From the IMG/VR virus record IMGVR_UViG_3300015262_000001, positions 1 through 64,000 of that record: a stretch of DNA of 64,000 nt. One strand, written 5' to 3'. The notes below the pieces were generated by a model. It was given only the letters and a program-made list of their open reading frames with translations. It searched no databases and was not told where the DNA came from. Made by a program: the position numbers and the translations under genes. Position 1 is the first letter of the stretch, and each line of letters starts with the position of its first letter. Below are positions 28,313-55,019 of this stretch, in pieces.

Positions 28313-28330
28313 ATGATATAGGTTTAAGTT
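28313..28330 (-). promoter_or_regulatory. Variant of the 18-nt early promoter motif
   Basis: Minus strand AACTTAAACCTATATCAT, 48 nt upstream of the RNAP beta gene; a weaker match than the other four copies. Confidence 0.4.
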
Positions 28331-33333: not shown

Positions 33334-33351
33334 ATAATGTAGGTTTTAAAT
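33334..33351 (-). promoter_or_regulatory. Early (virion RNAP) promoter motif
   Basis: Minus strand ATTTAAAACCTACATTAT, 38 nt upstream of the gp68-like gene; near-identical copies lie before chmA, phuZ and the HslV-like pair. Confidence 0.7.
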
Positions 33352-37351: not shown

Positions 37352-37755
37352 TGACCCAACCTCGCCTTATCCAACACTTGATAGAGACTGCCTGTCACCA
37401 ATACAACTTCAGACAGATCATAAGACACACCGTCTACAATCGCTCGAGCTGAGAGTAATAGATGGTAGTTATTTAGTTCGTTTTGTACAACTTGCTTTTG
37501 CACCAGCACTTCGCACTGTGGGAACAGTTCTTTCATGTAGGCTTCGAATTCTTGTTGCGTTCGTTCCATCATGGTTTCTGGCGTCGTACCATGGGTAGCC
37601 CAGAGAAAATAAAAACTGGGGACTTGACCAACGACTTTACCTTGGTCTCGACGCGAGGTAAACCAGTACATGAAATGCAACGCCATGGCTTCCTGAGGGG
37701 ACTTAACTTCCCAACCTGAACGCGTTGACATAGTAGCTACACAAAAATCGCTCAT
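37348..37755 (-). CDS. Conserved hypothetical core protein
   Basis: 135 aa, GGAAG upstream. Confidence 0.7.
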   Translation of the reverse strand: MSDFCVATMSTRSGWEVKSPQEAMALHFMYWFTSRRDQGKVVGQVPSFYFLWATHGTTPETMMERTQQEFEAYMKELFPQCEVLVQKQVVQNELNNYHLLLSARAIVDGVSYDLSEVVLVTGSLYQVLDKARLGQ

Positions 37756-40283: not shown

Positions 40284-42302
40284 TTACATGAACGGCATGT
40301 TCATGTTGTAAGCAACGCCCAGACCGTTACCGGAGGCGTTGTTCGAACCAGCACCCACGAGGGTAGCCAGACCGATGCCAGGCGTCGAAGCCAGGCTAGT
40401 GTTGCGCCAGCTGCCCAGGTTGTTGGCAACGTTCAGCTGACCGATGGTGTCCATGGCTTTCGACATGGCAGCCATGAAGTCAGGCGCCCAGATGTGAGGC
40501 TGAGCCCAGCCGTTGATGTGAACCTGACCGTCGAACAGCGACGAACTGGTTTCCACGCGCAGCTTCTGAGCACGTTGCTTGAACTCTTCGCCCTGGATGG
40601 TGCCGTACATGGTCGACAGCAGGCTTTCGGCTGCGAGCTGACCTTTCGGGCCCTTGATGTGCGAGATCATCATCTCGTCCAGTTCCTGGGTGTTGAACTT
40701 GCGACCGGCGTATTCGGCCAGGCCGTTTACAGCGATCATGCCAGTCGGGATCAGCACTGGCTTGGACGGCACCCAACCAACCTGAGCGGTAGCGTTGGCA
40801 CGGATGATTTCCGAGAACGCACCCTTGGTCATGCTGTCGATGAGCGAGATAACAACTTTGATTTCCGCCGCGTTCTGACCGACTTTGGCCAGCTGGAAGA
40901 AGAAGTTGTTGATCGACGCGTTCGGACCGGCCGGGATCAGGTTGATCTGGAAGGTCGCATGCGGGGAAACGTTCTGACGGATCCAGTTGTTGACCAGCTC
41001 GGTGTCCGACATCTTCTTCTCGTCGAGACGGATACGTTGCGGGTTCTGGAAGCCACCAGGGATCTGGCTTACCATTTGGTCAACACGAGTTTCCAGGTCA
41101 GCCAGGTTGCCGCGAGCACCAACGCTATGACGGCGCAGAGCTTCAGACCAGACGTACTGGTTGTTCGTCGCCATCAGCGCGTACAGGCCGGTGAAGAACG
41201 GGAACAGACCGCCGTTGTTGCAGAGTTGCTCGCCAGCTTGTACGGTACCAACGGTGATCACTGGACGCAGAGGTTTGAAGCCCTGTGGGTAAACACCCAT
41301 GCCCATGCTGTTGCCGAGGAACTGTTGCAGCGCGTTCATTTGCTCTTGCGAGCGGTGCGACATCATGAAACGCTGGTGATCTTCCCACGACACGCCGTTC
41401 AGGCTGACAGCCGCAGTAGCGCGGATGATCTCTTTCGAGTTGGCCTGGAAGTTGCCGGTGTTCTGGTTGCTGTTGTTGATCGTCGAAACGATCACTTCCA
41501 TGTTGTCCGGAGTCAACGTGCCGGCTTTGCTGGTGCGGAAGCTGATTGCGTTAACGCGAGCTTCTGCACAACCGTCTTTGCCGTAAGGTTCGTCGGTCTT
41601 GGCGAACGGAACCGGAACCTGGTAACCCTTGGCAACGATTTCGCGCACGGTCTTGACCATGATCGCTTCTTCCCACTCGGAGGCGATGTAGTTCGCCTGA
41701 CGGTGAGCGTAGTCTTTCGGATCGCCGGCTTCTGGGTGGTGCAGCATTTCCAGGTCGACAACGATCATGTTGATCACGCTGACGTTCTTCACGCCCTGAG
41801 CTTCGGCCACTTTGGTGTAGTGGGAAGTCAGCTTTTCCAGGAACACGTTGTTCGGGTACTGAGCCGGAGTCAGTGGTGCCGACATTTGTTGCATGATGTT
41901 GTTGGCGTTGACAGTGATGCGCTCAACACCGATGGACAGGGTGCGGTTGTAGAACAGCGCGGCCATGACGTACATGGTGCCGTCGAAGACAACGTACAGA
42001 CCGACGCCAGGCAGTTGTGCCGAGATGGACGGGGTCAGCATTTCAACGGTCGGAACGATTTTGCGTTGCAGTTCGTTGGTGGTGGACTTCTTGGCGTTCT
42101 CGTAGATCGCTTCGAGTTTCTCGATGGTTTCGGCAACCTCTTTGAGGTTACGGTTGTCGGACGTCATGGACGGCAGACGAAGCAGGCCAGCAAGACCATC
42201 CAGAGGAGCCATGGTGCCCGGAGCGCCTGGAGCCTGGTTAGTGGTGTTGGCTTGTTCTTTTTCGTTCCAGGAAGTGCTTTCGGAACCGGTATTCAGACTC
42301 AT
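40284..42302 (-). CDS. chmA: Chimallin, the major phage-nucleus shell protein (phiKZ gp54-like)
   Basis: 672 aa, immediately upstream of the beta' N subunit. It has highly expressed codon bias, flexible N- and C-terminal arms and its own early promoter. Confidence 0.85.
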   Translation of the reverse strand: MSLNTGSESTSWNEKEQANTTNQAPGAPGTMAPLDGLAGLLRLPSMTSDNRNLKEVAETIEKLEAIYENAKKSTTNELQRKIVPTVEMLTPSISAQLPGVGLYVVFDGTMYVMAALFYNRTLSIGVERITVNANNIMQQMSAPLTPAQYPNNVFLEKLTSHYTKVAEAQGVKNVSVINMIVVDLEMLHHPEAGDPKDYAHRQANYIASEWEEAIMVKTVREIVAKGYQVPVPFAKTDEPYGKDGCAEARVNAISFRTSKAGTLTPDNMEVIVSTINNSNQNTGNFQANSKEIIRATAAVSLNGVSWEDHQRFMMSHRSQEQMNALQQFLGNSMGMGVYPQGFKPLRPVITVGTVQAGEQLCNNGGLFPFFTGLYALMATNNQYVWSEALRRHSVGARGNLADLETRVDQMVSQIPGGFQNPQRIRLDEKKMSDTELVNNWIRQNVSPHATFQINLIPAGPNASINNFFFQLAKVGQNAAEIKVVISLIDSMTKGAFSEIIRANATAQVGWVPSKPVLIPTGMIAVNGLAEYAGRKFNTQELDEMMISHIKGPKGQLAAESLLSTMYGTIQGEEFKQRAQKLRVETSSSLFDGQVHINGWAQPHIWAPDFMAAMSKAMDTIGQLNVANNLGSWRNTSLASTPGIGLATLVGAGSNNASGNGLGVAYNMNMPFM

Positions 42303-42387: not shown

Positions 42388-42405
42388 GTAATGTAGGCCT
42401 GAAAT
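42388..42405 (-). promoter_or_regulatory. Early promoter motif upstream of chmA
   Basis: Minus strand ATTTCAGGCCTACATTAC. Confidence 0.75.
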
Positions 42406-49438: not shown

Positions 49439-50437
49439 TTACATGAAGAAGCCTTTGTCATCCGCACCGGCAGAGAGATCCTTCTGCTGGGTGAAGGTCC
49501 CTTGAGTTTCGACCTTGCGGGTTTCCATTGCTTCGATGTGTTTCTCCAGCTCTTTCAGAGCTTCGCCGTGGTCCAGGACCATGTGCAGTTCTTCGGCATT
49601 GCTTGGGCGTTTGACGCCGTCGGCAAACACGCCGGTGGAACGGATCACGGTGCCGTTGAAACGGGGGATGACCGCATCGCTGCTGCCGAACAGAGACGAC
49701 ACTGCAACCGGAACTTTGCCCTTGAAGTCGGCAACGCCTTTCTCGTCGTAGAAGCGAATACGCGACATGGACGGTGGGACGCCGTAGTGCTTGCTGAAGT
49801 TCAGCAGGTTCTTCAGGTCGGTGTGGTCTTGTTCCTTGTTGTCGTTGGTCAGGAACAGGCTGGCGACATCGAGCTTGTCGATGATCATCTGGTTGACTTC
49901 ACCGCGAGTGTTGGTCATGGTGTTATCGAATTCCATGTACGGCACAACGCGGTTCAGCGAACCTGGAGTGGTCAGCGACGCGTACGAGCGGTAGCTGTTC
50001 ACGACGTTGATTTCTTCGACCTGGGAGGTCTTGTCGTTGACGAAGCACAGTACGACCAGTTGATCGCGTTCGAACAGCATGCGTGCCAGAACGAAAGCCA
50101 GCATCGAACCAGTACCGCCGCCGGTGGAGCAGACGATGATGTTGTAATCGCGCGGTTTGTGTTTGGTCAGGAACTGAGTGATGAACTGTTCAGCCTGCGG
50201 GTAGTTGGTTGCTTTGACTTTACCCGAACCCTTGGCCTTCTGGTCAGGATCGTTGGCAACAGCCATTTGCACAACTTCGAAGAGGTCGCTGGAACTGTTG
50301 CGGTCTGAGGAGTCCAGACCGACGAAGTAGGCGTTCTTGTTGCTGTCGGTGTGAGTACCCTTTTTCAGAGCCACGCCGATGTTAATACCGGTACCACCGC
50401 AGAGGAAATACGCCAAATCCGAGTTATTTGCATTCAT
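49439..50437 (-). CDS. phuZ: Phage tubulin PhuZ
   Basis: CGGTGINIG, the tubulin signature GGGTGS, DHTDL (T7 loop) and a short C-terminal tail ending DDKGFFM. Confidence 0.95.
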   Translation of the reverse strand: MNANNSDLAYFLCGGTGINIGVALKKGTHTDSNKNAYFVGLDSSDRNSSSDLFEVVQMAVANDPDQKAKGSGKVKATNYPQAEQFITQFLTKHKPRDYNIIVCSTGGGTGSMLAFVLARMLFERDQLVVLCFVNDKTSQVEEINVVNSYRSYASLTTPGSLNRVVPYMEFDNTMTNTRGEVNQMIIDKLDVASLFLTNDNKEQDHTDLKNLLNFSKHYGVPPSMSRIRFYDEKGVADFKGKVPVAVSSLFGSSDAVIPRFNGTVIRSTGVFADGVKRPSNAEELHMVLDHGEALKELEKHIEAMETRKVETQGTFTQQKDLSAGADDKGFFM

Positions 50438-50502
50438 GTGAAAGATTCTCTTTGAGTTACCAGTTGGAAGAATTCGTTAGACCGTTTATGGTCAACACAC
50501 AG

Positions 50503-50520
50503 GTAATGTAGGCTTGAAAT
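50503..50520 (-). promoter_or_regulatory. Early promoter motif upstream of phuZ
   Basis: Minus strand ATTTCAAGCCTACATTAC. Confidence 0.75.
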
Positions 50521-50789
50521 CTTTTTACATGATCTCAACCCATTGCCAACATTGCCTAAGAAGCATACCCCAAGTGAAAAAGAACCCCTGCTGCAAATGT
50601 GGCGACAGGGGGTGTCCTCAGAAAAAGACTTAACACTTGTGAGTGAGAATACCTGCAAACCGAAGGACAGTAGGACCCACCTCCAATAAACACCTTCCGG
50701 ATAACCCAGCTATGAGAAAAACCGGTTGACGTGTGCAAGTATAAAATATATCTAGCGGGTAACAAAAAACAAAACGCGAAATAATCCCA

Positions 50790-50825
50790 CCGTACTCAAT
50801 CCCCCGTTAGAGAGATTGAGTACGG
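50790..50825 (-). terminator. Intrinsic terminator downstream of the HslV-like pair
   Basis: 12-bp stem CCGTACTCAATC / GATTGAGTACGG; TTTTGTTTTTTG lies a short way downstream on the minus strand. Confidence 0.75.
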
Positions 50826-50851
50826 GAGAGTACTTTGGCAGGTGGAGCTTT

Positions 50852-50935
50852 TCCCAACGATGTATTGTCGGGACAGCCAGTCGTTAATGGGGGACAACTG
50901 ACTGTTGCGGGTAGTGGACTCCAAACTATTCCCAC
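50852..50935 (-). ncRNA. Candidate structured 3'-UTR or small RNA (three abutting hairpins)
   Basis: Three back-to-back stems whose imperfect positions are G-U pairs on the minus strand; no ORF; no family recognised. Confidence 0.3.
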
Positions 50936-50998
50936 GGGTACGCCAGGGCTAACTATCTTCAAGCAGGAGCAAACTCACGAGTTCACATAGTATTAAAA

Positions 50999-51607
50999 CT
51001 ATGCGACCTTGGCGTCGGCTTCAGCGATAGCTTCTTCGGTAACCGCCTTTGCAAGCTTGTCCATGGTTTCCTCGGTGGTTTCGAAGGTAGGACGCTTCGA
51101 AGGAGTTTCTGGCGCCGGTGGTACCTCGAAGATCTGGAGATTACCCCCGCACTCGATACACAGGTTGATCGCCGCCTTCACACCTGCACGGGCTGACTTA
51201 CCGATGGACATCACCGACAACGCGAATTGCGCACCGTCCCCAACGGCGAGGAATCCAGTTGCTGGGATGATGTTCAGTACGGTGTGCTTGTCGCTCTTGG
51301 TGGACTCAGACGGTATGACCTGGTAAGCCACGCCGTTTTCACCGATCACGATTGCGTCGAAGGTGTTATCGAACGACGACGCATCTGAGGTGTTATCGAT
51401 CCCGCTCTGCAACAACTTGCGGAACTGCGGATAAACCACAGGAGTGCCGATCACAGCAAATGCAATTGCCTTCACCCCGCAGATCTCCCAGTACTCCCCT
51501 TCGTCTGGTGTGTAGATCTTGCGGAACTCACTTGGACTGATCTGGCCGTCAGTGTGGATGGCCGAGTCGGTGACCATAAGTTTACCGTCGAATGCTGCTA
51601 CGGACAT
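50999..51607 (-). CDS. HslV/proteasome-beta-like Ntn protein, catalytically degenerate paralogue
   Basis: Clear paralogue of the upstream gene (DGKLMVTDS...RKI...EGEYW...SIGKSA), but with no Thr1, GSG changed to GDG and DKYSGG changed to CIECGG. Confidence 0.75.
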   Translation of the reverse strand: MSVAAFDGKLMVTDSAIHTDGQISPSEFRKIYTPDEGEYWEICGVKAIAFAVIGTPVVYPQFRKLLQSGIDNTSDASSFDNTFDAIVIGENGVAYQVIPSESTKSDKHTVLNIIPATGFLAVGDGAQFALSVMSIGKSARAGVKAAINLCIECGGNLQIFEVPPAPETPSKRPTFETTEETMDKLAKAVTEEAIAEADAKVA

Positions 51608-51622
51608 GATTTGTTTTCCTGA

Positions 51623-52168
51623 TCAGGCGGGTGTCGCTTCGGCGACGACCACTGGCCGCGTGGATTTGATGGCTGGTTTTGGTGGCAGATCCCAGATTTG
51701 CAGATCACCGCCCGAGTACTTGTCCAGTCGGATGGCTGCTCGTACTGCTGCCTCAGCAGATTTGCCGATAGACAGAACCCCCAAGACAAACGGCTGACCC
51801 GAACCTGCTGCTGCTGGTGGGAACAGGGGGAGCAAGTCCGTGTGAAGCGGCCGACCCTGACGCTTGTTGACCTGCCAGCGATAGCATTGCCCGTCCTCGG
51901 TGATCAGCAATGCGGCGAAACCAATTTCGTCGATGTCTTCGACTTTCGTTTTGTGAGTAACCCCGATACGGAGTTTCTCTTTGACCACTTCGATCGATTT
52001 ACCATCTCCCGAGATACCGGCGGCCAATACACGGTGGCCCTGTACATCCCAGTATTCCCCTTCCTCGGGTTCGTGTATCTTCCTGAGACCACCCGGTTGA
52101 ATAATCATACCGGCAGTGGCTTGTGAATCGCTGACCAGTTTCTTTCCGTCCCACGCTACGCTCGTCAT
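51623..52168 (-). CDS. HslV/proteasome-beta-like Ntn peptidase
   Basis: M-T-S-V-A-W-D-G (Thr1), DSQ, RKI (Lys33 equivalent), AGSG and DKYSGG. Confidence 0.8.
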   Translation of the reverse strand: MTSVAWDGKKLVSDSQATAGMIIQPGGLRKIHEPEEGEYWDVQGHRVLAAGISGDGKSIEVVKEKLRIGVTHKTKVEDIDEIGFAALLITEDGQCYRWQVNKRQGRPLHTDLLPLFPPAAAGSGQPFVLGVLSIGKSAEAAVRAAIRLDKYSGGDLQIWDLPPKPAIKSTRPVVVAEATPA

Positions 52169-52232
52169 GTTTGCCTCCTCATGTTTCTTTCAAATCGGTT
52201 TTCTAGAATATGGTTTCCTAGGTGACAAAGTA

Positions 52233-52250
52233 GTAATTTAGGTTTGAAAT
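52233..52250 (-). promoter_or_regulatory. Early promoter motif upstream of the HslV-like pair
   Basis: Minus strand ATTTCAAACCTAAATTAC. Confidence 0.7.
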
Positions 52251-52266
52251 ACTCCATCCCTCTGTA

Positions 52267-52389
52267 TACCTCGTGCGTGTGTACGCGGGCGTTTCTTTGC
52301 TTTTAAAAGCTTTAAAAGAGCAATAAAGAATAAATATATATAAATATATATTAGGTTCTTTAGCGCACGGAGCGCGTGTGCGCGAGGTA
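52267..52389. repeat. Nested inverted repeats around an AT-rich core in a ~620-bp divergent intergenic region
   Basis: TACCTCG...CGAGGTA outer arms, palindrome GCTTTTAAAAGC and AATATATAT-AA-ATATATATT. Confidence 0.65.
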
Positions 52390-52791
52390 AACAGAAGGGA
52401 AAGAATTTCCTTTGAATTTAGCCAATTGACAAAACAAAAAACCTACCAGAAATTTCCGAAGGAAACTAAAAACAAGAAAATACTCCTTTACCCCCGGCCG
52501 CGGCGCTGGATCTCAAATAGAATATATAGGCGAGATGATATTTAAATGCCGGTCTCTGAGTGAGGGTTTATATCCACCTCCATCGTCCCTCTCAAGATCG
52601 ATCAGAAGCCACCTAGGAAACGTTCCTAGAGGTTTTCAGCATACGAGGTACCCTACGGTACTAGTTTTGGAGATGAGGTTCTCCAAAGCGATTTTAGAAG
52701 GTCTTCACTTTTAGACTGGTCGCCCCAAAAGGGATGCTATGACCCCTTCTTAACCCAATTTATTTACACCGATTCCTAGGAGTGCTAGATT

Positions 52792-53637
52792 ATGAACGCG
52801 GTGGATTACGCCATCAATCGGGTCACCAATTGTGACATCGACGACTACCTGCTTAAACTTGCTTTCGAAGCCCCCAACGGTAACTTCGCTGGTAACTGGT
52901 ACAACATGGTTAACCACACGACCGTGGAACAGGGTATCCGTGAGAAAGTGATTCACCGTACTGTACTGCCAGCGTGTAATGCCAACGGTGGTAAGACCGA
53001 GCTTATCGACTTGAGCGGTGCTCGTATCCGTGACCTGGGTAACGCTTGTATCGAAGTGAACGTACCGGACATCGTGACCGGTGGTCGCAAGATCATTTCG
53101 GTAACGGAGATCTATCTGGGTTCGATGACTTCGTCGACTGGTATGTTGGGGATGAGTACCAATACCAACGACATGTGTGGTCAGGGCAGTGTCGGGGACA
53201 TGACTGAAGCGCTGATCGACAGCCTCAGTTCCAACCGTCAGATGCCGGTGACTTACAACAACATCCACATGACTGGTAACAACTGCTTCGTGATCTTTGG
53301 TTTGAACTCGGGTACTTACTCGATGTCGGCCAAGATGATCCTGGAGTTCGATGAAGGTCTGAGCAGTATTTCCACACGCCAGCATGAACACTTTGCTCAC
53401 CTGGTGGAACTGGCTGTTAAGGCGTACATCTACCGGACCTGCCGTCGTCCTACTCAGGAAGCGATTATCCGCAGCGGTATTTCTTTGAGCGACATCAAGG
53501 ATGACATCATGGAATACCGTGATGCCTGGAAAGACTACCACGAATACCTCACCACGGAATGGACCAAGCGGATGGCCTACAGTGACCGTCAGCGTGTGAC
53601 TGATGCCGTGCGCCGTTCTGTCCCAAGGAGATACTGA
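52792..53637 (+). CDS. Conserved phiKZ-like structural protein (possible neck/adaptor)
   Basis: 281 aa, AGGAG SD; function inferred weakly. Confidence 0.5.
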   Translation: MNAVDYAINRVTNCDIDDYLLKLAFEAPNGNFAGNWYNMVNHTTVEQGIREKVIHRTVLPACNANGGKTELIDLSGARIRDLGNACIEVNVPDIVTGGRKIISVTEIYLGSMTSSTGMLGMSTNTNDMCGQGSVGDMTEALIDSLSSNRQMPVTYNNIHMTGNNCFVIFGLNSGTYSMSAKMILEFDEGLSSISTRQHEHFAHLVELAVKAYIYRTCRRPTQEAIIRSGISLSDIKDDIMEYRDAWKDYHEYLTTEWTKRMAYSDRQRVTDAVRRSVPRRY

Positions 53638-55019
53638 TGACCTCGTTTATTGAACCCTCGATCTTCAGTTTGTTTGAAGGTACGGAAGAACACTCGATCC
53701 TGGCTAAGGGTGGGTTGTACCTGGAGCCGCTACACCCAAGTGAGATCCAGTCGGTAACAGGTGCTGAAGCTTTGCTGTCAGGTATCAACTTCGACAGTAA
53801 CCATGCCATCCTGGAAATCTGCAACAAGTTCGGTGACTTCCTGGTTATCGACGAGAAGTGGGCCAAGATACTGCGTCGTTACGTCTACTCGTTCGTAACC
53901 CGAAGTGTGGGCGTGGTGAGTCATATGGAGTTCTTCGGTTCTCCGTATCTCGGTTTGCACAAGATCACTTTCACCACGGCTGACCGTAACCAGTGGTTCT
54001 CTGAGATCTTCGACGTTGATGAAGAGGAACTCAAAGAAAACCTGCACGCAGCCAAAGCAGTGAACAAGGACTGGAGTGTTGTGGGTGATACCTTCAACCT
54101 GACCATTCCCTACCTGTTGTATCGGGTAAACCGCTCTAGCCTGAGCAAGGATACCAAGCACCAGGCGATGATCGATATCCTGTCGATGTATCACTACAAG
54201 TGTTTGACGTCGATCATTCACAACGACTATCCGTTTATGGCACGGAAAGAAGTGGTGCTGGAAACCTATAACCGTTTGAGTCTGAAATATGATATCAAGC
54301 GTTACGGTAGCTGGCGGGCTTTGATCGAGGCTCGGGCTGAGTTCATCATCAACCCGAAGACTGGTATCCACTACGATGCTTTCAGCAAAATGGATGACGA
54401 CAAGAAAATCGTCTACATGGTCGGGGATATCCAGAACCGGTTGCGTCGAGCGATCAACGACATCAACAAGGTGTTCCACGACGTCAAGAACAAAACCGAC
54501 ATCGTTCGGATTGACGGGGCAAAGGTAAACCTGGGCGATGAGTTGGCACTGAAGACGCAGACCAAGGAGATCACCCAGTTTGTTCTCTACCTTGATCGTA
54601 TCCTCACCGAGGAGACTTCGTTCTACAAGGACGAGTTGGTCAAGTATGCAGCTGATGCATTGGAAGGCTGTCCCCGCGACAAGCTGGCGTACGTCATCCA
54701 GCAGTTCCCGACGATGTACAACAACCCGAAGAAGCCGGAATACAAACAGTTTGCTGATGCGGTACTCCAGCACATGTTTGAATACCTGCACACCAATGGT
54801 ATTAAGAAAACCAACGTGTATGACGTCTTGATCAAGATGCGCGGTGCCTACGGGGCTCCTCGTAGCAAGAACGATACCGTCAAGGTGATCCGAGCCCTGG
54901 GTGATCAAATCATCAAAGAGCGAACAGGGGTCATAACCCAGCAAACCGTGCAACTGGTACGTACCGCACTGTGTCTGTACATCGTGTTGCGTATCCTGAG
55001 CAAGGACTATTTTGAGTAA
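53637..55019 (+). CDS. Conserved phiKZ-like hypothetical/structural protein
   Basis: 460 aa, TGATG coupling, all-helical. Confidence 0.65.
   Translation: MTSFIEPSIFSLFEGTEEHSILAKGGLYLEPLHPSEIQSVTGAEALLSGINFDSNHAILEICNKFGDFLVIDEKWAKILRRYVYSFVTRSVGVVSHMEFFGSPYLGLHKITFTTADRNQWFSEIFDVDEEELKENLHAAKAVNKDWSVVGDTFNLTIPYLLYRVNRSSLSKDTKHQAMIDILSMYHYKCLTSIIHNDYPFMARKEVVLETYNRLSLKYDIKRYGSWRALIEARAEFIINPKTGIHYDAFSKMDDDKKIVYMVGDIQNRLRRAINDINKVFHDVKNKTDIVRIDGAKVNLGDELALKTQTKEITQFVLYLDRILTEETSFYKDELVKYAADALEGCPRDKLAYVIQQFPTMYNNPKKPEYKQFADAVLQHMFEYLHTNGIKKTNVYDVLIKMRGAYGAPRSKNDTVKVIRALGDQIIKERTGVITQQTVQLVRTALCLYIVLRILSKDYFE

What the first reader, a model, noticed from the sequence alone, without database searches (positions are those of the whole stretch)
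50999..52168. Tandem HslV/proteasome-beta-like pair: one active, one apparently dead with a CxxC
The first gene keeps Thr1, Lys33, GSG and DxxSGG. Its paralogue starts M-S-V (no Thr1), has GDG, and replaces DKYSGG with CIECGG. An active subunit paired with an inactive one recalls hetero-oligomeric proteasome rings, and the new CxxC could bind metal or sense redox. The pair is driven by the same early promoter as chmA and phuZ, and no HslU-like ATPase is in this window. It is a candidate two-subunit phage protease for host-protein removal, anti-defence or nucleus quality control.
Basis: partly seen in the sequence, partly recalled or inferred. Interest (0 to 1): 0.65.

Follow-up and report, generated by a model that had tools for sequence, protein, structure and literature searches.

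The report
Tandem phage proteasome-like (PPH) gene pair
An uncultivated nucleus-forming jumbo phage carries two adjacent, co-transcribed genes of a catalogued but unstudied phage family of miniature proteasome-like enzymes: one has a textbook active site, the other has a serine nucleophile and a remodelled pocket, and the second is altered but maintained by selection, not simply dead.

Summary
Two minus-strand paralogues sit at 51623-52168 (A, 181 aa) and 50999-51607 (B, 202 aa), 36% identical. Both fold confidently as proteasome-beta/HslV-type Ntn hydrolases that lack helix H2. [quoted passage not shown]

A has the full catalytic set. B is not demonstrably dead. All B orthologues keep Ser1, Asp17 and Lys33, and B is under purifying selection as strong as A's (dN/dS about 0.10). 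Its second shell is remodelled: Gly47 to Ala, Asp166 lost, Ser129 variable.

The CxxC is not conserved, and each Cys occurs singly in Thr1-bearing relatives, so a metal or redox role is unlikely.

A-B is a bicistronic unit with its own copy of the promoter element also found before chmA and phuZ (11 sites genome-wide, all on one strand), and it ends in a covarying terminator. The complete 228.6 kb genome has no HslU-like ATPase.

Copy number at this locus runs from 1 to 3 among relatives, and B never occurs without A. Hetero-oligomer formation is plausible but has only weak in-silico support. A very highly conserved non-coding spacer between B and phuZ was noticed in passing.

The parts
51623..52168 (-). 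Gene A: 181-aa PPH-type proteasome-like Ntn hydrolase with the canonical active site (Thr1 after Met removal, Asp14, Lys30, Gly51 as the Gly47 equivalent, GSG, DKYSGG) and a proline-rich C-terminal tail (PPKPAIKSTRP)
   Evidence: ORF and translation. PHROG 1040 E 3.5e-29. AF2 pLDDT 91.3, pTM 0.87. Foldseek hits to proteasome beta and HslV at E about 2e-7, prob 1.00. Motif table. dN/dS 0.085.
50999..51607 (-). Gene B: 202-aa diverged paralogue. Ser1, Asp14 and Lys30 are kept. Gly47-equivalent is Ala, GSG is GDG, DxxSGG is CIECGG. It has the ancestral-type tail PPAPETPSKRP plus a C-terminal helix (residues 179-201).
   Evidence: PHROG 1040 E 2.3e-17. AF2 pLDDT 89.1. VIA-align to HslV 4hnz_A: Z 16.9, rmsd 2.1 A over 142 residues, with model residue 2 on chain residue 1. 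Orthologue alignment. dN/dS 0.099.
52234..52249 (-). Promoter-like element TTTCAAACCTAAATTA, 66-81 nt upstream of A's ATG. It belongs to the same class as the elements before phuZ (50504-50519) and chmA (42389-42404).
   Evidence: Near-identical to EL's annotated 'putative phage promoter'. 5 sites in the window against 0.73 expected, 0 of 100 shuffles reaching 5. 11 sites in the genome, all on the minus strand, none on the plus strand or in the reversed control. Alignment of the sites.
52174..52180 (-). Shine-Dalgarno GAGGAGG for A. B has AGGAAA in the 15-nt A-B spacer (about 51613-51618).
   Evidence: Read directly from the sequence. The 5' UTR and RBS are invariant in 5 genomes.
50775..50840 (-). 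Intrinsic-terminator hairpin followed by a U tract (50755-50774), ending the A-B transcription unit
   Evidence: Folding energy -35.3 kcal/mol, z -5.17, 0 of 200 shuffles as stable. 8 stem pairs keep pairing through changes on both sides across 5 genomes.
50841..50997 (-). Highly conserved, partly structured 3' untranslated block directly after B (block 1 of the B-phuZ spacer)
   Evidence: Alignment A5 has 81% column identity with long invariant runs, while the flanking proteins are 50-77% identical. Hairpins carry 4 compensatory pairs besides the terminator. Present in every A+B genome and not detected in EL, L006, L014 or L026. No Rfam or tRNA match.

Best explanation
A and B are two paralogous members of the phage proteasome-like family PPH, a minimal HslV/proteasome-beta fold without helix H2. 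They are transcribed together from a phage promoter of the class that also drives chmA and phuZ, and transcription ends at an intrinsic terminator. After removal of the initiator Met, A exposes Thr1 and has every residue of both proteasomal catalytic triads, so it is most likely an active N-terminal-nucleophile peptidase. B arose by duplication of a type-1 PPH gene within a clade of roughly 214-229 kb EL-related nucleus-forming phages. It then went through a burst of change and has since been kept under purifying selection. It exposes Ser1 and keeps Asp17 and Lys33. It has lost the Gly47, Ser129 and Asp166 environment and gained a fixed acidic residue at position 168 and a C-terminal helix. 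B is therefore most likely a catalytically attenuated or re-specialised subunit, not a dead one. The likeliest arrangement is that A and B work together, probably co-assembling into HslV/BPH-like rings that act without a dedicated ATPase. Shown here: the fold, the paralogy, the residue pattern, selection, the operon anatomy, the lack of an ATPase, and the co-occurrence. Inferred: Met removal, catalytic activity, co-assembly, early timing, and the substrates.
For: Fold: AF2 pLDDT 91 and 89, Foldseek and VIA-align to HslV, BPH and 20S beta, and a profile hit to beta5 that places the catalytic motifs in register. PPH hallmark: both models have only three core helices, with H2 missing; PMC8665760 says only PPH/RPC lack H2 and lists the triad as Thr1/Ser1-Asp17-Lys33. 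Residues: every A is canonical and every B has Ser1, Asp and Lys in 8 or more distinct genomes. Selection: dN/dS for A is 0.085 and 0.129, for B 0.099 and 0.161. Tree: B's stem is 1.09 against 0.09 for A, with ordinary branch lengths inside the B clade. Operon: promoter, a 14-15-nt A-B spacer conserved in relatives, and the terminator. B is always found next to A, while A-type genes occur alone in EL and L026. Other lineages also carry two kinds side by side: L006 and L014 have type 1 plus type 2. No HslU/Clp-type ATPase in the complete genome. Ser1 is a competent nucleophile in beta5-T1S (PMC4792962).
Against: Nothing has been measured: there is no activity, assembly or expression data for any PPH. 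Loss of Asp166 and Ser129 strongly reduces proteasome activity (D166N about 60% lower; D166A inactive in the archaeal enzyme), and every B also has Ala at the oxyanion-hole Gly47 position, so B could be hydrolytically inert despite Ser1. Co-assembly rests on gene adjacency and on a weak complex prediction. That prediction scored 0.32 with best control 0.00. The mark was reached by 58 of 80 solved complexes and 2 of 110 mismatched pairs, but at 0.60 or under by only 7 of those 80 and by both mismatches that passed. The runs agree in at least 100% of contacts and the partner's pLDDT is at least 84. A pass may also only reflect the model's memory of proteasome-like complexes. EL and L026 manage with one copy and L013 has three, so a fixed two-subunit particle is not a general requirement. 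The missing H2 and the C-terminal tails might prevent HslV-like double rings altogether (PMC8665760 raises this point).
Confidence: 0.5

Rival explanations
1. One reading: A is the only active subunit and B is a catalytically dead structural partner in a hetero-oligomeric ring, as with the inactive beta subunits of the eukaryotic 20S. B's CxxC would act as a metal or redox sensor.
For: B differs from A at five active-site positions: T1S, G47A, S129D, D166C and S169C. D166 and S129 matter for proteasome catalysis. A and B are adjacent and co-occur. The complex prediction gave weak support: 0.32 against a best control of 0.00, with the caveats and counts quoted under the best explanation.
Against: Ser1, Asp17 and Lys33 are invariant in all B orthologues under purifying selection. 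By contrast, the really degenerate copy L013_g1 lost the nucleophile and the Lys. The two Cys are not conserved within the B clade: CIES in L020, L021 and P0007, NIDT in L009 and P0008, NVDS in L016. Single Cys residues occur at these same positions in Thr1-bearing members: DVNCGG, DVGCGG and CAYTGG. Two thiols at buried second-shell positions do not make a recognisable metal site.
Confidence: 0.15
2. A and B are independent enzymes. Each forms its own homo-oligomer or stays monomeric, and B is neofunctionalised for a different, narrower reaction: a specific processing peptidase, or a transpeptidase or ligase in the manner of connectase.
For: B kept the minimal triad while its whole pocket was rebuilt, and was then frozen by selection. 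B has its own C-terminal helix, which A lacks. Proteasome-like homologues include a monomeric, highly specific ligase (PMC8665760). Copy number of 1 to 3 at this locus points to modular paralogues and not a fixed complex. pSal-SNUABM-04 carries two HslV-like genes at unlinked positions (PMC7823757).
Against: B is never seen without A, and the 14-15-nt spacing that suggests coupled expression is conserved. Weak in-silico A-B support exists (with the caveats quoted above). No insertion over the active site like connectase's is predicted.
Confidence: 0.25
3. The phage subunits use the host's HslU (or another host unfoldase) as their ATPase, forming a hybrid ATP-dependent protease that redirects host proteolysis.
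For: The closest solved structures are HslV (Z 16.9). The phage genome has no ATPase of its own. Some other nucleus-forming phages encode an HslU-like protein (RAY gp116, reported as nuclear-localised: bioRxiv 10.1101/2023.02.24.529968).
Against: Helix H2 lies on the face that meets the regulator ring in proteasome and HslV (established structural knowledge), and it is missing here. Pfam's Proteasome/HslV model does not recognise either protein. The host is unknown. BPH shows that such rings can exist without an unfoldase (PMC8665760).
Confidence: 0.08

Closest known systems
[quoted passage not shown]
   Same: Carried by tailed phages. Compact group-I proteasome-like fold without propeptide and without helix H2. 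Thr1/Ser1-Asp17-Lys33 triad. No partner ATPase. Function unknown.
   Different: PPH is described as about 140 aa, whereas A and B have a core of about 165 aa plus a conserved proline-rich tail, and B adds a C-terminal helix, which recalls the related RPC group. Tandem arrays of 1-3 paralogues next to phuZ, and a fixed Ser1/Ala47 sub-lineage, are not described there. Direct clustering with the authors' reference set could not be run.
Bacterial HslV (ClpQ), peptidase of HslUV
   Same: Best structural match (Z 16-17, rmsd about 2.1-2.4 A). N-terminal Thr exposed simply by Met removal. GSG and Lys33 motifs.
   Different: 12-17% identity. Not recognised by Pfam PF00227. H2 is missing. The genome has no HslU. 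The SGG motif after Asp166 resembles 20S beta more than HslV. B uses Ser.
BPH (Betaproteobacterial proteasome homologue, PDB 5ovs/5ovt)
   Same: A group-I homologue that forms rings without a known unfoldase. Structural match at Z 16.2-16.3 and a profile hit to 5ovu at E 0.02.
   Different: BPH has all four helices and a long acidic pore loop. It is bacterial, and a single gene.
Eukaryotic 20S beta ring (active beta1, beta2 and beta5 with inactive paralogues)
   Same: Paralogues with intact and altered active sites encoded by one genome. The catalytic motif pattern D17, K33, S129, D166 and S169 is shared with A.
   Different: Inactive 20S beta subunits lack the nucleophile, whereas B keeps Ser1, Asp and Lys. 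Hetero-assembly of A and B is unproven. There is no alpha ring and there are no propeptides.
Two HslV-like genes without HslU in Salmonella jumbo phage pSal-SNUABM-04 (PMC7823757)
   Same: A jumbo phage with two proteasome-like paralogues and no ATPase subunit.
   Different: There the genes are unlinked (ORF 1 and ORF 116). Nothing was reported about Ser1 variants, operon structure or selection.

Membership tests
PPH (phage proteasome homologue, Fuchs et al. 2021) | Proteasome-like Ntn beta-sandwich core (S1-S11) | tested here: met
   AF2 models with pLDDT 91 and 89. Foldseek prob 1.00 to 20S beta and HslV. VIA-align Z 16.9.
PPH (phage proteasome homologue, Fuchs et al. 2021) | Second flanking helix (H2) absent, a feature the paper says only PPH/RPC have | tested here: met
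   DSSP of both models gives only H1 (56-68), H3 (about 125-134) and H4 (about 138-149). Residues 69-81 form a loop (definition). This rests on predicted models, not solved ones.
PPH (phage proteasome homologue, Fuchs et al. 2021) | Catalytic triad Thr1/Ser1, Asp17, Lys33 and no propeptide | tested here: met
   A has M-T, D14 and K30. B has M-S, D14 and K30. Each ORF starts at the first possible start codon after a stop.
PPH (phage proteasome homologue, Fuchs et al. 2021) | Found in tailed phages and prophages; compact, about 140 residues | tested here: inconclusive
   The phage distribution is met: 98 phage records, 49 BFVD structures, and viral Atlas clusters. Size is larger: a core of about 165 aa plus tails, 181 and 202 aa in all.
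PPH (phage proteasome homologue, Fuchs et al. 2021) | Clusters with the authors' PPH reference sequences (CLANS/HHpred database 'proteasome_homologs') | not testable with these tools
   The reference alignments are on an external repository and no reference sequence is held here.
HslV proper (peptidase of HslUV) | Recognised by the curated Proteasome/HslV sequence models | tested here: not met
   No Pfam hit for A and none to PF00227 for B. The only NCBIfam hit is arc_protsome_B at 12 bits against a cut-off of 224.
HslV proper (peptidase of HslUV) | Partner AAA+ unfoldase HslU encoded with it | tested here: not met
   No AAA_2 (PF07724) and no relative of RAY gp116 in the complete 228.6 kb genome. 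The control rang in 14 of 14 genomes.
HslV proper (peptidase of HslUV) | N-terminal Thr nucleophile | tested here: met
   Met for A only (M-T-S). B has Ser.
HslV proper (peptidase of HslUV) | Two stacked hexameric rings | not testable with these tools
   Only one pairwise complex job was available. Ring stoichiometry was not modelled.
Hetero-oligomeric proteasome-type ring with active and inactive subunits | The two paralogues bind each other | tested here: inconclusive
   Complex prediction gave weak support: 0.32 with best control 0.00. The mark was reached by 58 of 80 solved complexes and 2 of 110 mismatches, but at 0.60 or under by only 7 of those 80 and by both mismatches that passed. Runs agree in at least 100% of contacts; partner pLDDT at least 84.
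Hetero-oligomeric proteasome-type ring with active and inactive subunits | The inactive partner lacks the catalytic nucleophile or triad | tested here: not met
   B keeps Ser1, Asp14 and Lys30 in all orthologues.
CxxC metal-binding or redox motif | Both cysteines conserved among orthologues | tested here: not met
   CIEC occurs only in the window's sub-clade. Other B members have CIES, NIDT or NVDS.

The most novel reading that the evidence does not exclude
A and B build the first viral hetero-oligomeric proteasome-like particle. It would be an ATPase-independent ring in which a canonical Thr1 subunit alternates with a Ser1 subunit whose proton-relay residues have been rewired (carboxylate moved from position 166 to 168, Ala at the oxyanion position). 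The particle would be made early in infection by a nucleus-forming phage, and the conserved structured RNA at the 3' end of its mRNA would be part of the same module.
Probability: 0.2. Interest if true: 0.65.

Novelty: new variant of a known kind. Interest (0 to 1): 0.42.

Why it matters
PPH was named in 2021 as the first truly viral branch of the proteasome family, but nobody knows what it does. This locus offers a clean natural experiment. Within one clade of EL-related nucleus-forming phages, the gene sits beside phuZ under the chmA/phuZ promoter class. It is present in one, two or three copies, and these copies span a canonical Thr1 enzyme, a selectively maintained Ser1 variant with a rewired second shell, and a truly dead copy. 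Expressing these few proteins would show whether PPH is a peptidase, whether it assembles without helix H2, whether Thr-to-Ser plus loss of Asp166 changes the chemistry or only slows it, and whether viruses re-invented the mixing of active and altered proteasome subunits. On the practical side, it corrects the easy annotation 'HslV protease, one subunit inactive'.

Tried and rejected
- A single-sequence PDB search for A gave only spurious cupin hits. The profile search was needed.
- megablast of the locus against cultured phages found nothing. The genome is an uncultivated IMG/VR record.
- The mBio paper on JSS1_004 mentions host hslV only as a transcript and is irrelevant.
- RAY gp116 ('HslVU family', nuclear) turned out to be an HslU-like ATPase, not a relative of A or B, and it has no counterpart in this genome.
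- I looked for a remnant of the third paralogue (L013_g1) upstream of A in the window and found none. I also looked for a remnant second copy in EL's and L026's spacers and found none.
- The sigma-70 promoter and terminator consensus scan was no better than shuffles and missed the real hairpin. The AT-rich TATATATTTA repeat upstream of A is not a recurrent motif.
- Rfam and tRNA scans of 50300-52900 gave nothing above threshold.
Full report
**1. What is there**

The window belongs to a complete (direct terminal repeats), uncultivated 228,597-bp IMG/VR phage genome. It encodes chimallin (40284-42302, minus strand) and PhuZ (49439-50437, minus strand), so it is a nucleus-forming jumbo phage. Its nearest cultured relatives at this locus are Pseudomonas phage EL and its kin, at 37-39% protein identity.

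At the reported coordinates there are two minus-strand ORFs. A is at 51623-52168 (181 aa, P0001). B is at 50999-51607 (202 aa, P0002). They are 15 nt apart and 36% identical (E 6e-35). They are the only two copies in the genome.

**2. Fold and family**

- Pfam does not recognise either protein as Proteasome/HslV, and NCBIfam gives nothing useful.
- PHROGs places both in phrog_1040 'peptidase HslV family': A at 3.5e-29 and B at 2.3e-17.
- A profile of 29 relatives hits proteasome beta5 in the PDB at E 2.5e-4, and BPH at 0.02. The family's D14, K30, G-S-G and D-x-x-S-G-G are aligned to D17, K33, G128-S129-G130 and D166-x-x-S169-G-G.
- The AlphaFold2 models are confident: A has pLDDT 91.3 and pTM 0.87, B has 89.1 and 0.79.
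- A's best Foldseek matches are 20S beta subunits and HslV (E about 2e-7, prob 1.00, TM 0.5-0.6).
- B superimposes on HslV at Z 16.9, rmsd 2.1 A over 142 residues, with B's residue 2 on HslV's Thr1.
- Both models have only three core helices. The segment where helix H2 should be (residues 69-81) is a loop.

Fuchs, Alva and Lupas (PMC8665760) state that, among all proteasome-like homologues, only PPH/RPC lack H2. [quoted passage not shown]

I therefore file A and B as PPH-type proteins. They are somewhat longer than the roughly 140 aa quoted for PPH, and direct clustering with the authors' reference set could not be run. I found no experimental work on PPH. The fold is common in phages: 98 phage records by tblastn, including 45-120 kb phages that form no nucleus, and 49 BFVD models at E <= 1e-3.

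**3. Is B dead?**

I collected every copy from 20 related loci and tabulated the catalytic positions.

- Every A orthologue is canonical: M-T, Asp, Lys, A-G-x-x-G-D (the Gly47 region), G-S-G, and D-K-[YWF]-S-G-G.
- Every B orthologue (8 or more distinct genomes, 49-100% identical to the window's B) has M-S, the Asp and the Lys.
- Every B also has Ala at the Gly47 position and has lost the following 'SGD' turn.
- The Ser129 position in B is D, P, S or T. The Asp166 position is C or N. An acidic residue is newly fixed at position 168. The Ser169 position is C, S or T.

Purifying selection on B is as strong as on A. For the unsaturated window-L013 pair, dN/dS is 0.099 for B and 0.085 for A. With L011 it is 0.161 and 0.129. 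In the tree, B sits on a long stem (1.09 changes per site, against 0.09 for A), but branch lengths within its clade are ordinary. That pattern means a burst of change followed by constraint.

A really degenerate paralogue is available for comparison. L013_g1, in the closest relative, starts M-G, has Asn for the Lys, has GHG and has no SGG. It sits on a branch of 2.65.

In the yeast proteasome, beta5-T1S keeps about 55-60% of its activity and reacts covalently with inhibitors. D166N costs about 60% of activity, and D166A is inactive in the archaeal enzyme. Asp166 and Ser129 protonate the Thr1 amine (PMC4792962).

My reading is that B has a usable nucleophile and general base in a rebuilt, probably slower or more specialised, site. 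'Dead' is not shown and is the less likely reading, but only an assay can decide.

**4. The CxxC**

The two cysteines occupy the Asp166 and Ser169 positions. Within the B clade the motif reads CIEC (the window's sub-clade), CIES, NIDT or NVDS. Thr1-bearing relatives carry a single Cys at one or other position: DVNCGG in L006_g1, DVGCGG in L026 and CAYTGG in L014_g1. The pair is thus a lineage-recent coincidence of two tolerated substitutions at known second-shell sites. It is not a conserved metal or redox module.

**5. Transcription unit**

The element TTTCAAACCTAAATTA lies 66-81 nt upstream of A's ATG. It nearly equals the 'putative phage promoter' annotated before EL ORF016, the PhuZ-sized gene. 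Variants with one or two changes precede phuZ at the same distance (50504-50519), chmA (42389-42404), and two more minus-strand sites at 33335-33350 and about 37535-37548. A looser, 2-mismatch copy also precedes the RNA polymerase beta-subunit gene at 28314-28325.

The window has 5 sites against 0.73 expected, with 0 of 100 shuffles reaching 5. The genome has 11 sites, all on the minus strand, none on the plus strand and none in the reversed control.

So the pair has its own copy of the promoter class used by chmA and phuZ. That this class is 'early' is inferred from what is known of chmA and phuZ in other chimalliviruses.

B is followed by a hairpin of -35.3 kcal/mol (z -5.2) and a U tract. 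Eight of its stem pairs covary across five genomes. A-B is therefore a bicistronic unit, separate from phuZ.

**6. Evolution of the locus**

All relatives share the order: divergent DUF7484 gene, then the PPH array, then a spacer of about 400-580 nt, then phuZ. Copy number varies:

- One copy in EL and L026.
- A+B in the window and in seven further distinct genomes.
- Three copies in L013: dead copy, A, B.
- In the more distant L006 and L014, a type-1 gene plus a type-2 gene. Type 2 is the deep branch that also holds SPN3US gp1 and Jedunavirus gp41 (split support 98/99).

B is never found without A. Carrying two different PPH genes side by side has thus arisen at least twice. That is the best comparative argument that the two kinds cooperate, but it is also what two independent specialisations would give.

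The single complex prediction allowed gave weak support. The score was 0.32 with a best control of 0.00. The mark was reached by 58 of 80 solved complexes and 2 of 110 mismatched pairs, but at 0.60 or under by only 7 of those 80 solved complexes and by both mismatches that passed. The runs agree in at least 100% of contacts, and the partner's pLDDT is at least 84. The pass may also only reflect likeness to solved proteasome complexes. I treat co-assembly as plausible, at about 40-45%, and unproven.

**7. No ATPase**

Neither Pfam AAA_2 nor the HslU-like RAY gp116 finds anything in the complete genome, and the AAA_2 control was positive in 14 of 14 genomes. Together with the missing H2, this favours an unfoldase-independent enzyme like BPH over a hybrid with host HslU. 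The same 'HslV without HslU, two copies' situation was noted for phage pSal-SNUABM-04 (PMC7823757).

**8. Verdict**

The pair is a new variant within a known but uncharacterised phage family (PPH). Its value is as a tractable entry point to PPH function and to the question of Thr versus Ser nucleophiles. Nothing here supports a specific role in host-protein removal, anti-defence or nucleus quality control.

**9. Seen in passing**

The 560-nt 'non-coding' spacer between B and phuZ is more conserved than the genes around it: 81% column identity with invariant runs of more than 50 nt, against 50-77% protein identity and saturated dS for the flanking genes.

- Block 1 (50764-50997) lies on the A-B transcript upstream of, and including, the terminator. 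It folds into hairpins with 12 compensatory pairs, 8 of them in the terminator. The shuffled control gave 5.7 +/- 1.6 (0 of 500 reaching 12), and slid controls gave at most 4.
- Block 2 (50523-50761) begins with an invariant promoter-like box and ends in a second hairpin with a U tract.
- Both blocks occur in every A+B genome and were not detected in EL, L006, L014 or L026. Neither matches Rfam or a tRNA.

Noticed in passing
window 50523-50997 (minus strand), between B and phuZ: The spacer is far more conserved than the flanking genes: 81% column identity across 5 genomes, with invariant runs of more than 50 nt. Block 1 (50764-50997) is a structured 3' region of the A-B mRNA that includes a covarying terminator. 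Block 2 (50523-50761) starts with an invariant box TAGATATATTTTATACTTGCACACG and ends in a CCCCTG...CAGGGG hairpin plus U tract, with a 25-nt insertion in its loop in three genomes. There is no Rfam or tRNA match. These are candidate novel phage non-coding RNAs, restricted to the clade that has gene B.
   Followed up: partly
L013:910-1422 (the closest relative's locus); no counterpart in window 52169-52750: A third, truly degenerate PPH paralogue (170 aa; M-G start, Lys33 to Asn, GHG, no SGG) sits upstream of A in one strain. It is absent from the window and from L019, which comes from the same metagenome and carries an identical B. Copy number at this locus therefore changes between very close strains.
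   Followed up: yes
A residues 160-173 (window about 51650-51691) and B residues 161-174 (window about 51086-51127): A conserved proline-rich C-terminal motif, [WF]-[ED]-[LV]-P-P-x-P-x-x-x-S-x-R-P, follows the last strand in all type-1 members (EL, L006_g1, L014_g1, L026, A and B). It is absent from type-2 members, SPN3US gp1 and the Jedunavirus protein. B keeps the ancestral PETPSKRP version, while A's version has diverged. It is predicted to be unstructured and may be a docking or assembly peptide.
   Followed up: partly
window 52169-52791 (upstream of A) versus L009 and L020: The long leader and promoter region of A is mosaic. Window, L011 and L016 share it, including the AAACCTAAATTA box and a possible small hairpin transcript around 52440-52520. 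L009 and L020 have an unrelated sequence without that box. The last 60 nt or so of the 5' UTR (CCATATTCTAGAAAAAC...ACATGAGGAG) are invariant in all five.
   Followed up: partly
whole genome G000:C1, 11 sites (e.g. 33335-33350, 42389-42404, 50504-50519, 52234-52249, 75275-75290, 146022-146037): The promoter-like element TTTNAANCCTANATTA occurs 11 times, always on the minus strand. It matches the 'putative phage promoter' annotated in phage EL, so it is probably the clade's promoter for the chmA/phuZ expression class.
   Followed up: partly
L014:5563-6093: In the L014 lineage an unrelated 176-aa ORF with no detectable family is inserted between the two PPH paralogues.
   Followed up: no
window 52792-53637 (+) and 53637-55019 (+): Divergently transcribed neighbours of the pair. 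The first is a DUF7484/phrog_3179 protein and the second a phrog_2921 protein, both of unknown function. They are conserved next to the PPH array in all relatives, including EL (ORF014 and ORF013).
   Followed up: no
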